Assembly: GCA_900088475.1 (NCBI GenBank)
Contig: FLMG01001160.1
Span: forward strand, 103,436 to 167,435
Length of the DNA stretch: 64,000 bases
Source of the DNA: Hyphochytrium catenoides
Taxonomy: Eukaryota > Protista > Hyphochytriomycota
Reading direction: 5' to 3'
Shown piece by piece: positions 48,200 through 50,452 of the stretch. The stretch's first letter is position 1. Each line of letters starts with the position of its first letter. The notes beneath the pieces were generated by a model. The model ran no database searches. It saw only the letters and a program-made list of their open reading frames with translations, and was not told the DNA's origin. The translations under genes and the position numbers were made by a program.

Positions 48200-49183
48200 T
48201 TTCCTGGCACTGAGTTATTGCGGGGTATATTCCACCTAAATTATGCCGTCAAATGCCATCTCGAATACAAAGATTGGAATGCTTGCAGCGCTGAATGCTA
48301 TAACCTGAAGGTTGAACCCTCACTGTCCTCAATTCTTCAGCTACATGTACCCTAGCACATGTGCAAACATGCACAACTCTGCCTCCTTGGCTGACACTTG
48401 CCATGAGGAAAGCTCTGATGGCTTGTCACAACCCGCCCCCGATATCGCGGCCTCCATGAAGCTTGGAGATGGCCCTCCATTCAGATTTCTGAATCTCTAT
48501 TTCCAGGCAGAGCCTTTTTCTGCAGTCGCCCTTTTGACGCCCTGAAAATTTATACGCTTGTAAGGAATATGTGAATATTGTGAGTGTTCATAACCTAATT
48601 CAGTATTATCCGGGATGTAGGCCAAAGAGCGCATGATATTCAAAATCTCTGGTACAGGATCAACAGATTGACAGACAAACTTGACAAATCTTGGAAAATA
48701 CTCAAACCAATATGATTATAGGGAAAGGAGGCTGCAGGTAATCTTCAACAGCTGCGCGCCGCTCTTGTACATGCATCGTCGGCGTCCCGCTCATGATTCT
48801 TCAATGATCTCCGTCCAGATCTTTGAAGAGTACCAGACAGTTCGATGATGTGCGCCGTCCCCTCTCTTCGAGCTGACTAGCAGAAAGAGGACAAATTCAT
48901 TAGGTCAAACTCGTAGGTTCTCTTGTCTAGATCTTAGGTACCAGAAAGGAAGCTGGCGGTTCGGCGACAGTATTGGCTTCTTTGACCGGAGAAGATACTC
49001 GTCTCTTGTAAGCGCTCAGGCGCCGATGGCATGAATCCAGATAGACGACGCCAACTTCGCGGCGGGCGAGGCTATTTGCAATACGTCCTTCCTCACTGTT
49101 CCCTACACTAAGCCACCGAGGATCTTCTGCCCATTTTTCTTCGTTTGAGTGGAGGCTGGAGCCCGGGAGGATCTGGGGCAAAA

Positions 49184-50452
49184 ATGGGGTCATCTCGCAC
49201 TGCAAACAAAATAATACTCTTCTTTACCCTTTTGGCGACCCTAACCCCTTCATGGGCGCATCAAGGCGATTTTGGAAGAAGCCACGATCATCACACCATA
49301 GCGAGAGACCACAGAGGACGAAGCACCTTCGACGCAAACACGGAGCAGAATAAGGTTATTAGTAGTCAACTGGAGATGGTGCGCCGGTCACCAAAGACTT
49401 GCCCCTATGATAGCATGGGAGTTAACCAGAATGAGTACTTTGAGTTCAAAGGGAATCAGCGTATCTATTTCTGCCCTATGAACCACTTGCCAAGCTTTGC
49501 AAAGGATCCTGCCAAGACGTTCAAGTCCATCGAACCCTTCAATCCGTCTGGGGGGGAAGAGCTGCCTAACGATATCAGGTGCCCCATTTGCGACATGACC
49601 TTGGACAGCCAATCTACCTACGATATACATTTCCATAATGGCAATCAAGCGGTGCACTTTTGCAGCGAGTCCTGTGCCAAGCAATTCTGGGATGATCCAT
49701 TGAAGTTCGCAGCGGATGACCCCATGCCTCACGCATCAACGGACCAGTCTTCTGAGGGCTTCTGCAACGGGTTGCCGAGCATCATGTTCTTGGGGTTCAC
49801 ATGGGTTGCTCCGGACACGGACTGCGTGTTGCTGTGGTTGCCTGGCTGGATCCTGGATTCGAGAGTCAAGATGCTCCTTGGACTGCTCACTGTCTTCACA
49901 TTGGCATTTATGAGTGAGGGACTGACCAGCTACCAGAGGTACTTAAATTGGCTTCGAAGAAATGCAGAGGCCGATATGTTAAAGGACGAAATAGTATGCA
50001 ACCCTGGCGTATCTCAGTCGCTGCAGCAGAGCTTACAGGTGTCGGAGCGCACTAACCTTCTCATCTCTTCCACAAGGTCTGGCACCTCCAAGATCAACGC
50101 CGAGTCGGTCGGAAGGCATAGGATACTTATTTCCGAGTGGAGGGTCTTCAAACGACTGAACTTCCAGCAGCGACTTGCGCTCTTGCGCCTCTCTCTGCTG
50201 CACGGCTTACGGATTCTTATGGCGTATCTCTTGATGCTTGCAGCGATGACCTACAGCATCTCAATGAACGCGGCTATCGTCTCTGGCTTCATCGTAGGAC
50301 ATTACTTCTTTAGCGACGCAGGCATCACTACCGAGATAGAGGACAAAGATCTGGAGGATCCCTCTGGGAGCAGCAGCAAGCGGTATCGTGGAGCGAGCTT
50401 CAACTATGATGAAGTGGCTGACTTTGCTGATCCTTGTTGCAGCAATGCCTAA
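49184..50452 (+). CDS. Ctr/SLC31 copper transporter with signal peptide, His-rich segment and two TRASH/YHS-like domains, intronless
   Basis: Ctr motifs MFLGF...LLWLPGW, MSEGL, YLLMLAAMTYS (MxxxM), GFIVG (GxxxG) and C-terminal DPCC. N-terminal CPYDSM...IYFCPMNH...FAKDP and CPICDM...VHFCSESCAKQFWDDP. Confidence 0.88.
   Translation: MGSSRTANKIILFFTLLATLTPSWAHQGDFGRSHDHHTIARDHRGRSTFDANTEQNKVISSQLEMVRRSPKTCPYDSMGVNQNEYFEFKGNQRIYFCPMNHLPSFAKDPAKTFKSIEPFNPSGGEELPNDIRCPICDMTLDSQSTYDIHFHNGNQAVHFCSESCAKQFWDDPLKFAADDPMPHASTDQSSEGFCNGLPSIMFLGFTWVAPDTDCVLLWLPGWILDSRVKMLLGLLTVFTLAFMSEGLTSYQRYLNWLRRNAEADMLKDEIVCNPGVSQSLQQSLQVSERTNLLISSTRSGTSKINAESVGRHRILISEWRVFKRLNFQQRLALLRLSLLHGLRILMAYLLMLAAMTYSISMNAAIVSGFIVGHYFFSDAGITTEIEDKDLEDPSGSSSKRYRGASFNYDEVADFADPCCSNA

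What the first reader, a model, noticed from the sequence alone, without database searches (positions are those of the whole stretch)
49184..50452. Ctr copper importer carrying two extracellular TRASH/YHS-like metal-binding domains
Seen: an intronless 422-aa ORF with a signal peptide, a His-rich stretch (HQGDFGRSHDHH), two tandem modules at about 49400-49705 (CPYDSM...YFCPMNH...FAKDP and CPICDM...HFCSESC...FWDDP), and then an intact Ctr core (MLAAM, GFIVG, C-terminal CC). Established: characterised Ctr/SLC31 proteins capture Cu(I) with unstructured Met/His motifs, whereas TRASH/YHS domains (CPVCGM...YFCS..C...F..DP) are mostly known from prokaryotic Cu-ATPases, chaperones and regulators, usually on the cytosolic side. 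Inference: a folded, tethered extracellular or lumenal copper-scavenging or sensing module on a trimeric channel. Repeat 1 is degenerate (second Cys lost, last Cys replaced by His), suggesting a graded hand-off. Similar proteins may exist in oomycetes, but I know of no functional characterisation.
Basis: partly seen in the sequence, partly recalled or inferred. Interest (0 to 1): 0.78.

Follow-up and report, generated by a model that had tools for sequence, protein, structure and literature searches.

The report
Copper channel with YHS-type outer domains
This gene encodes a copper-uptake channel (Ctr family) whose outside-facing end carries two small folded metal-binding modules of the YHS/TRASH type; the same build is found in many protists, has been noted in the literature only as an "unannotated" domain, and has never been tested.

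Summary
The C-terminal half is a Ctr copper transporter (Pfam Ctr 64 bits, E 2e-17).

The two N-terminal modules fall below Pfam's YHS cut-off (16 against 30.3 bits), but they are true YHS/TRASH homologues:
- The protein alone hits bona fide tandem YHS proteins in a search of 1.84 billion proteins (E 1e-18 to 1e-9).
- Eukaryote-only profiles of each module match bacterial YHS units at 99% probability.
- A confident AlphaFold model (pLDDT 86.6) retrieves only YHS/TRASH clusters, plus ribosomal L24e, NosL and monooxygenase YHS regions.

The architecture is not unique. 30 of 134 related Ctr clusters carry such modules, always N-terminal, in oomycetes, Fonticula, ichthyosporeans, Corallochytrium, Syssomonas, Rhodelphis and Diphylleia. 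Albugo candida Ctr has it too, so this is probably the "unannotated N-terminal domain" of Strenkert et al. 2023.

The His in place of the fourth Cys in repeat 1 is the family norm, not decay. Only the Cys-to-Asp change is private to this protein.

Copper capture and hand-off to the pore is the likeliest role but was not tested. I rate this a new member of a barely described, uncharacterised subfamily. This scan holds no other note on it on other DNA.

The parts
49184..50452 (+). Complete coding sequence (422 aa plus stop) of the YHS-YHS-Ctr protein
   Evidence: ORF list and translation. Colinear with 28 relatives from signal peptide to C-terminal DPCC.
49184..49258 (+). Predicted signal peptide (residues 1-25; hydrophobic core IILFFTLLATL, S-W-A before the likely cut)
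   Evidence: Read from the sequence. Relatives also start with a hydrophobic leader. No signal-peptide predictor was available.
49259..49312 (+). His-rich stretch HQGDFGRSHDHHTIARDH (residues 26-43)
   Evidence: Similar His-rich stretches follow the leader in several relatives (P0005, P0007, P0025, P0096, P0150).
49391..49525 (+). YHS/TRASH-like module A (residues 70-114): C73-P-Y-D76-S-M78 ... Q92 ... C97-P-M99-N-H101 ... DP
   Evidence: The eukaryote-only type-A profile matches bacterial YHS units with hhalign probability 99.0%, E 6e-18. Model pLDDT is 88-97.
49571..49714 (+). YHS/TRASH-like module B (residues 130-177): C133-P-I-C136-D-M138 ... Q155 ... C160-S-E-S-C164 ... DP
   Evidence: The type-B profile matches YHS units at probability 98.8%, E 6e-17. 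Pfam YHS gives only 16.2 bits, E 0.011. The fold matches eL24/Rlp24, the ToMO hydroxylase YHS region and NosL at Z 2.7-3.2.
49760..49849 (+). Conserved pre-TM1 motif F-C194-x-G ... M201-x2-G-F ... C214 ... W222
   Evidence: C194 is kept in 28/28, M201 in 29/29 and C214 in 28/29 aligned sequences. The motif is also present in relatives without YHS modules (P0001, P0002).
49868..49930 (+). TM1 (about residues 229-249)
   Evidence: Hydropathy segment 223-249, inside the Pfam Ctr match 216-376.
49931..50188 (+). Cytosolic TM1-TM2 loop (residues 250-335). It is rich in Arg/Lys and longer than in relatives.
   Evidence: The side of the membrane follows from Ctr topology (inference).
50189..50257 (+). 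TM2 with the M351-x3-M355 selectivity motif (MLAAMTY)
   Evidence: M351 and M355 are each kept in 27/29 aligned sequences. Pfam Ctr.
50264..50314 (+). TM3 with G368-x3-G372 (GFIVG)
   Evidence: G368 is kept in 27/29 and G372 in 28/29 aligned sequences.
50315..50449 (+). Cytosolic tail ending in D-P-C418-C419
   Evidence: Among aligned relatives, P417 is kept in 23, C418 in 25 and C419 in 23 of 29 rows, with gaps counted.

Best explanation
The gene encodes a three-helix Ctr (SLC31-type) copper(I) channel subunit. Its ectodomain replaces the usual unstructured Met-rich tail with a signal peptide, a His-rich stretch and two folded YHS/TRASH-type modules.
- Module A carries the ligands Cys73, Asp76, Met78, Cys97, Met99 and His101.
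- Module B carries Cys133, Cys136, Met138, Cys160 and Cys164.

The modules most likely bind copper on the outer (or lumenal) face. They would pass it to the invariant Cys194/Met201/Cys214 cluster at the pore mouth, then through the MxxxM filter of TM2 to the cytosolic C-terminal Cys-Cys pair.

Shown here: Ctr membership, YHS/TRASH homology and fold of both modules, their position N-terminal of TM1, and conservation of the architecture across distant eukaryotes.

Inferred: the side of the membrane (from the signal peptide and the known Ctr topology), trimer formation, copper as the metal, and the relay itself.
For: - Pfam Ctr scores 64.4 bits, E 2.3e-17, over residues 216-376. MxxxM, GxxxG, the Met about 22 residues before TM1 and the C-terminal CC are all present and near-invariant in relatives.
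- In an exhaustive HMMER search, the query alone hits proteins that Pfam scores as YHS far above cut-off: P0013 at E 1.4e-18, P0029 at 5e-11, P0045 at 1e-9.
- hhalign of eukaryote-only module profiles against bacterial YHS units gives 99.0% and 98.8% probability.
- The AlphaFold model built with 28 sequences has pLDDT 86.6 and pTM 0.70.
- The ESM-Atlas shape search returned ten rows, nine of them clusters annotated YHS/TRASH and one without a common family.
- In an unbiased search of 48,161 PDB chains, the top hits are eL24/Rlp24, the TRASH prototype, followed by NosL and monooxygenase YHS regions.
- The ligand columns argue for metal sites, not disulfides. The fourth position is His in 16 and Cys in 5 of 29 sequences for type B, and His in 18 of 23 for type A. 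Met after CxxC is kept in 21 of 23 (type A) and 21 of 29 (type B).
- 30 of 134 related Ctr clusters carry one or more modules, always N-terminal of the pore. They come from Phytophthora, Saprolegnia, Aphanomyces, Albugo, Fonticula, Sphaeroforma, Pirum, Corallochytrium, Syssomonas, Rhodelphis and Diphylleia.
- Literature: the stand-alone form of the Albugo-type N-terminal domain in Chlamydomonas (Cre05.g236039) is a target of the copper regulator CRR1 and is proposed to act in Cu acquisition (doi 10.1101/2023.10.19.563170).
- A YHS domain acts as a copper sensor in a Mycobacterium phlei adenylyl cyclase (PMC4626032).
Against: - Pfam's own YHS model does not reach its cut-off on this protein (16.2 against 30.3 bits).
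- Structural Z-scores are low (about 3), as expected for 45-residue domains, and would not stand alone.
- TRASH-fold domains in L24e bind a structural metal, and the YHS domain of toluene monooxygenase shows no bound metal (PMC4626032). Fold membership therefore does not prove copper binding.
- Free thiols outside the cell are easily oxidised.
- Module A of this protein has lost one of the family's Cys ligands.
- No expression data were obtained.
- That the Albugo domain of the paper equals this module is inferred from the species and from Pfam's blindness to it. It was not read from the paper's figure, and Cre05.g236039 could not be fetched.
Confidence: 0.62

Rival explanations
1. The modules are copper sensors, not scavengers. 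Metal binding to the ectodomain at high copper closes the channel or triggers its removal from the membrane, as copper-induced endocytosis and degradation do for yeast and human Ctr1.
For: The one biochemically studied YHS domain acts as a Cu switch on an enzyme (PMC4626032). Ctr proteins are down-regulated by copper (review PMC9502191). The fusion is always covalent and N-terminal.
Against: The stand-alone secreted form is induced in copper deficiency via CRR1, according to Strenkert et al.. That fits acquisition better than shut-off. The module number varies from 1 to 5, which is more typical of capture arrays than of a defined switch.
Confidence: 0.15
2. The modules are structural zinc ribbons (or disulfide-stapled knots) with no exchangeable metal. 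They would serve as a rigid spacer or as a docking surface for a partner such as a cupric reductase or an extracellular copper carrier.
For: The best structural matches are eL24/Rlp24 and TFIIH p44 zinc fingers, where the metal is structural. Pfam gives faint matches to zinc-finger families. Several relatives, including the first module of Albugo, Peronospora and P0006, have lost all Cys yet keep the fold signature.
Against: A conserved Met follows CxxC, a C-x-M-x-H signature is present, and Cys/His interchange at one position. This soft-ligand mix is typical of Cu(I) sites. Disulfide pairs would not tolerate single Cys-to-His swaps. Zinc ribbons are rare in secreted domains (general knowledge).
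Confidence: 0.13
3. The protein sits in an internal membrane (vacuole or endolysosome), like yeast Ctr2 or plant COPT5. The modules would face the lumen, and the protein would mobilise stored copper instead of importing it.
For: The Ctr family has both plasma-membrane and vacuolar members (PMC9502191). The genome holds a second Ctr with a Cys-Met type ectodomain that could be the surface importer.
Against: Nothing in the sequence points to a vacuolar address. This is a question of location and is compatible with the main mechanism.
Confidence: 0.1

Closest known systems
Ctr/SLC31 high-affinity Cu(I) transporters (yeast Ctr1/Ctr3, human CTR1; salmon Ctr1 crystal structures, PMC6437178)
   Same: Pfam Ctr above cut-off. 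Three helices, MxxxM in TM2, GxxxG in TM3, a Met about 20 residues before TM1, and a Cys motif at the cytosolic C-terminus.
   Different: There are no MxM or MxxM 'Mets' motifs in the ectodomain. Two folded YHS-type modules and an invariant Cys/Met/Cys cluster before TM1 take their place.
'Protist cluster' Ctr proteins with an unannotated N-terminal domain, represented by Albugo candida Ctr, and the stand-alone secreted Chlamydomonas protein Cre05.g236039 (Strenkert et al., bioRxiv 10.1101/2023.10.19.563170; cited as Metallomics 16, mfae013, 2024)
   Same: Albugo candida A0A024G4U5 (P0219) falls in the 90%-identity cluster of hit P0011. It carries the same type-B module and pre-TM1 motif, and Pfam sees only Ctr in it. 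It is the same subfamily as the window protein.
   Different: The paper leaves the domain unnamed and untested. Here it is shown to be a divergent YHS/TRASH domain in two subtypes. Identity with Cre05.g236039 could not be checked, because its sequence was not retrievable.
CTRA-CTR proteins (Chlamydomonas CTR1/CTR2, Dictyostelium p80) with Cys-Met CTRA ectodomains
   Same: Same idea: a folded, Cys-rich, extracellular domain fused N-terminally to a Ctr pore, with stand-alone secreted copies.
   Different: The fold is unrelated. The paper states the Albugo-type domain is not related to CTRA. The other Ctr gene of this genome (L001) has the Cys-Met motif type.
YHS domain (Pfam PF04945) / TRASH domain (Ettema et al. 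2003), e.g. the Mycobacterium phlei adenylyl cyclase Cu sensor and the N-termini of Cu-ATPases; secreted tandem YHS proteins of Planctomycetota and other bacteria
   Same: The CP[VI]C-x-M ... G-x-Q-x-[IV]-[YH]-[FT]-C-S-x2-[CH] ... F-x2-DP-x2-[YF] signature, the fold, and the tandem arrangement with a similar linker.
   Different: The modules are fused to a eukaryotic Ctr pore. The fourth ligand is mostly His, and type A adds C-x-M. Most members score below Pfam's cut-off.
Ribosomal protein eL24/L24e and Rlp24 (TRASH-fold prototype); copper chaperone NosL (7og7)
   Same: Best structural matches to module B: Z 2.7-3.2 over 50-53 aligned residues.
   Different: No detectable sequence relationship beyond the Cys pattern (L24e E 0.9), and different biological roles.

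Membership tests
Ctr copper transporter family (Pfam PF04145 / SLC31) | Profile match above the curated cut-off | tested here: met
   64.4 bits against a cut-off of 25.3, E 2.3e-17, residues 216-376.
Ctr copper transporter family (Pfam PF04145 / SLC31) | MxxxM in TM2 followed by GxxxG in TM3 (signature MxxxM-x12-GxxxG, PMC9502191) | tested here: met
   M351-LAA-M355, then 12 residues, then G368-FIV-G372. The columns are near-invariant in relatives.
Ctr copper transporter family (Pfam PF04145 / SLC31) | Three transmembrane helices with the N-terminus outside and the C-terminus inside | tested here: inconclusive
   Hydropathy gives 223-249 and a double-length segment 331-371. A signal-like leader and an Arg-rich loop after TM1 fit N-out. 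No topology predictor or experiment was available.
Ctr copper transporter family (Pfam PF04145 / SLC31) | Met-rich (MxM/MxxM) motifs in the ectodomain | tested here: not met
   Ectodomain Met residues are at 65, 78, 99, 138, 181 and 201, and none forms MxM or MxxM. Some accepted Ctr members also lack this feature, e.g. Chlamydomonas COPT1, so it does not exclude membership.
Ctr copper transporter family (Pfam PF04145 / SLC31) | Cys/His motif in the cytosolic C-terminus | tested here: met
   D-P-C418-C419, conserved in 23-25 of 29 aligned sequences.
Ctr copper transporter family (Pfam PF04145 / SLC31) | Homotrimer that conducts Cu(I) | not tested
   No complex prediction or assay was run. Inferred from family membership.
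YHS domain (Pfam PF04945) / TRASH | Pfam YHS profile above its gathering score | tested here: not met
   16.2 bits against 30.3, E 0.011, and only on residues 158-176. One relative with the same architecture passes: P0150 from Diphylleia, at 55 bits.
YHS domain (Pfam PF04945) / TRASH | Significant sequence homology to accepted YHS domains by other means | tested here: met
   phmmer of the query against 1.84 billion proteins hits tandem YHS proteins at E 1.4e-18 to 1e-9. hhalign of module profiles against YHS units gives 99.0% and 98.8%.
YHS domain (Pfam PF04945) / TRASH | Four metal ligands in the pattern C/D-x2-C ... C-x3-C (PMC4626032; the spacing of about 19-22 is quoted from memory of Ettema et al. 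2003) | tested here: inconclusive
   Module B has C133-x2-C136-x23-C160-x3-C164, so all four are present with a slightly longer spacer. Module A has C73-x2-D76 ... C97-x3-H101, so two of four are Cys.
YHS domain (Pfam PF04945) / TRASH | TRASH/YHS fold | tested here: met
   The model has pLDDT 86.6. The Atlas shape search returned ten rows, nine of them YHS/TRASH clusters and one without a common family. The top PDB hits are eL24/Rlp24, monooxygenase YHS regions and NosL, but only at Z about 3.
YHS domain (Pfam PF04945) / TRASH | Binds a transition metal | not testable with these tools
   Needs metal-binding assays on the ectodomain.

The most novel reading that the evidence does not exclude
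YHS-type modules would be an ancient, pan-eukaryotic extracellular Cu(I)-capture device. They occur fused to Ctr pores in holozoans, nucleariids, stramenopiles, Rhodelphis and CRuMs, and also as free secreted proteins. Their mixed Cys/Met/His sites would replace the Mets motifs, and the free forms would act as extracellular copper chaperones that dock on and load Ctr. That would be a second, unrecognised kind of copper-acquisition ectodomain beside CTRA, derived from secreted bacterial tandem YHS proteins.
Probability: 0.3. Interest if true: 0.65.

Novelty: new member of a known kind. Interest (0 to 1): 0.45.

Why it matters
Textbook Ctr transporters catch copper with floppy Met/His tails. Folded capture domains are only now being recognised, the CTRA domains of Chlamydomonas being the first.

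This work gives a name and a fold, YHS/TRASH, to a second kind of fused ectodomain that standard annotation misses. It defines two subtypes and their candidate ligands. It also shows that the architecture spans several eukaryotic supergroups, including close unicellular relatives of animals and plant-pathogenic oomycetes.

That makes a concrete question testable: how do cells pull copper from very dilute or strongly complexed sources? It also offers a eukaryotic, extracytosolic setting in which to study the poorly understood YHS domain.

For this particular gene the result is modest. It is one more uncharacterised member of that subfamily.

Tried and rejected
- The word-index protein search found only two weak Ctr relatives for the whole protein and none for the ectodomain alone. 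That was a sensitivity limit, not true absence, because the exhaustive HMMER search found 496 relatives.
- NCBIfam gave no match.
- The ESM-Atlas feature search on the ectodomain gave no usable hit.
- A single-sequence AlphaFold run was useless (pLDDT 40.5). It was replaced by the alignment-based model.
- Foldseek against PDB gave no significant match. The best was E 0.29, although the top rows were YHS-bearing monooxygenases.
- A single-sequence PDB search gave only chance-level zinc-finger hits.
- The own genome was searched for further copies of the module and for Pfam YHS. No other convincing copy was found.
- For expression, only one 225-nt contig of a possibly-RNA run touches 48965-49189, upstream of and just into the start codon. 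It shows nothing about transcription of the gene.
- The profile search with alignment A1 is not counted as independent evidence, because A1 already contained six bacterial YHS proteins.
- A bacterial origin of the whole gene (HGT) was considered and rejected. All full-length relatives are eukaryotic Ctr proteins.
- I did not run complex prediction. Trimer formation is a family property, and a pass would not have changed my odds.

Full report
**Observation.** Window 49145-50452 (+) is one open frame. Its first ATG is at 49184, in the context aaaATGg, and gives a 422-aa protein.
- a hydrophobic leader (residues 1-25)
- HQGDFGRSHDHH (26-37)
- CPYDSM...YFCPMNH...FAKDP (from C73)
- CPICDM...HFCSESC...FWDDP (from C133)
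- MLAAM (351-355), GFIVG (368-372) and the C-terminal CC (418-419).

Neighbouring genes have few long ORFs, so they are intron-rich. This gene is colinear with its relatives from leader to C-terminus without a break.

**The pore half.** Pfam Ctr matches residues 216-376 at 64.4 bits (cut-off 25.3). The signature MxxxM-x12-GxxxG, the Met about 22 residues before TM1 (M201) and a C-terminal Cys pair are present. All are near-invariant in 28 aligned relatives. The ectodomain has no MxM or MxxM motif. The genome (61 Mb, 4,759 contigs) holds only one other Ctr gene, and that gene has a different, Cys-Met type ectodomain.

**Are the repeats YHS/TRASH?** Pfam itself says 'not quite': YHS scores 16.2 bits against a cut-off of 30.3, and faint TRASH and zinc-finger rows follow. 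Four other lines of evidence settle the question.
- An exhaustive HMMER search of 1.84 billion representatives with the whole protein found 496 relatives. Among them are proteins without any Ctr part that consist of tandem YHS domains (P0013 at E 1.4e-18; P0029, P0031, P0045, P0061, P0129 and others at 1e-11 to 1e-6). Pfam scores these as YHS at 45-224 bits.
- I built profiles from the eukaryotic Ctr-fused modules only and compared them with 66 bacterial YHS units. The first module type gave 99.0% probability (E 6e-18) and the second type 98.8% (E 6e-17). The two types match each other at 99.5%.
- An AlphaFold model of residues 66-222, built on a 28-sequence alignment, is confident: pLDDT 86.6, pTM 0.70, and both modules at 88-98.
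- The ESM-Atlas shape search returned ten rows, nine of them bacterial clusters annotated YHS/TRASH and one without a common family. An unbiased alignment against 48,161 PDB representatives put eL24/Rlp24, the TRASH prototype, on top, followed by NosL and the YHS region of diiron monooxygenase hydroxylases.

The Z-scores are only about 3, as expected for 45-50 residue domains. I treat the structural evidence as consistent, not decisive. The sequence evidence carries the claim.

**Two module subtypes, and what is and is not degenerate.** Across the Ctr-fused family the modules fall into two types.
- Type A reads C-P-x-C-x-M ... G-N-Q-x-[IV]-Y-x-C-x-M-(x)-H.
- Type B reads C-P-V-C-G-M ... G-x-Q-x-I-H-T-C-S-x2-[H/C]-A.

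The fourth 'Cys' of the classical TRASH pattern is His in 18 of 23 type-A sequences and in 16 of 29 type-B sequences. What is private to this protein is Asp76 in place of the second Cys; it is the only Asp in that column among 23 aligned sequences. Asp is a usual first ligand in bacterial YHS domains (DPVCGM; PMC4626032). Module B of this protein is one of the minority with all four Cys.

Cys/His interchange at one position, together with conserved Met next to the Cys pairs, is what one expects of metal ligands. It is not what one expects of disulfide partners. This reading is inference from the alignment.

**The architecture is a family.**
- Among the 151 best cluster representatives, 134 have the Ctr core. 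Thirty of these carry one to five YHS-type modules, always N-terminal of the pore. The commonest order is A-B-Ctr, as here.
- Named members come from Phytophthora ramorum and P. boehmeriae, Peronospora belbahrii, Albugo candida, Saprolegnia, Aphanomyces and Lagenidium (oomycetes). Others come from Fonticula alba, Sphaeroforma arctica, Pirum gemmata, Corallochytrium limacisporum, Syssomonas multiformis, Rhodelphis marinus and Diphylleia rotans, plus MMETSP and metagenome sequences.
- The best identities to the window protein are only 30-39%, so the window organism has no close sequenced relative in the database.
- Earlier notes of this scan call it an oomycete-related stramenopile. I did not test that.

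**Bacterial relatives.** The closest bacterial relatives begin with signal peptides or lipoprotein leaders. Extracytoplasmic YHS domains are therefore not unusual in that branch.

**Literature.** Strenkert et al. (bioRxiv 10.1101/2023.10.19.563170) surveyed Ctr fusions. They named the CTRA domain of Chlamydomonas CTR1/2. [quoted passage not shown] That domain also occurs as a stand-alone secreted protein (Cre05.g236039), which is a CRR1 target and a proposed copper-acquisition factor.

The Albugo candida Ctr A0A024G4U5 (P0219) sits in the 90% cluster of my hit P0011. It has a Cys-less YHS-like module, a type-B module and the same pre-TM1 motif, and Pfam reports only Ctr for it. This is very probably the same domain. 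I could not view the paper's figure or fetch Cre05.g236039, so that link stays an inference.

I found no paper that links YHS or TRASH to Ctr proteins, and no functional study of any member.

**Mechanism.** Shown: a Ctr pore, two YHS-fold modules, a His-rich stretch, and an invariant Cys194/Met201/Cys214 cluster just before TM1. All of these lie between a leader peptide and TM1.

Inferred from the established Ctr topology (N-terminus outside, C-terminus in the cytosol, trimeric pore): the modules face the medium or an organelle lumen.

The most likely working model has four steps:
1. The His-rich stretch and the two modules capture copper, probably Cu(I) after surface reduction.
2. They pass it to the Cys/Met/Cys cluster at the pore mouth.
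3. It moves through the Met rings of TM2.
4. It reaches the C-terminal Cys-Cys pair for transfer to chaperones.

I put about 0.6 on this. The rest is split among a copper-sensing or regulatory role, purely structural zinc ribbons, and a lumenal (vacuolar) location. The last would not change the chemistry.

**Caveats.**
- No RNA evidence was obtained. The one possibly-RNA contig covers only 48965-49189.
- The TM1-TM2 loop is longer than in relatives, and a short in-frame intron there cannot be excluded. It would not touch any feature discussed.
- DNA contigs of the same organism show G>T at 49551 (Gly123Val, in the linker) and a synonymous C>T at 49768.

**Verdict.** The gene is a new member of a widespread but barely described and uncharacterised Ctr subfamily. 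The useful addition here is the identification of its ectodomain as a divergent YHS/TRASH domain in two subtypes.

Noticed in passing
G000:C1458, locus L001 688-1977 (+): The only other Ctr gene of this genome (Pfam Ctr 98 bits) has a long ectodomain with three Cys-Met motifs (CTSMPFMIGC-x5-C, CSQMNMDGC, CQSMWMDEC). It resembles the Chlamydomonas CTR1/2 Cys-Met/CTRA type, so the organism seems to carry both kinds of folded-ectodomain Ctr.
   Followed up: partly
window 49994-50076: The cytosolic TM1-TM2 loop is longer than in relatives. It contains an ACTAAC-like branch site followed by a pyrimidine run and AG (50050-50076). A short in-frame intron (for example 50017-50076, with a poor donor) cannot be excluded, and there is no RNA evidence.
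   Followed up: no
window 49551 and 49768: Public DNA contigs of the same organism differ from the window. G>T at 49551 changes Gly123 to Val in the linker between the modules. C>T at 49768 is synonymous at Asn195. These are probably allelic.
   Followed up: no
PDB chains 9d2f_A and 9fqr_Xf: The ectodomain profile matches Cys-poor YHS-like repeats (CPV...YYFSS..AKEKF...PE.Y) inside axonemal adenylate kinase 9 chains at E about 4e-7. YHS-like modules without metal ligands therefore seem to be used as repeats in a ciliary protein.
   Followed up: no
proteins P0001, P0009, P0060, P0096: Several relatives combine the same Ctr core with a C-terminal cytosolic HMA (heavy-metal-associated) domain, and some also carry N-terminal YHS-type modules. 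That puts metal-binding domains on both sides of the pore. P0009 from Lagenidium appears to hold several Ctr cores in one 1150-aa model.
   Followed up: no
proteins P0006, P0008, P0219: In peronosporalean and Albugo Ctr proteins the first module keeps the YHS signature (DPV.GE...NGQ...F.S) but has lost every Cys, while the second module keeps its ligands.
   Followed up: partly
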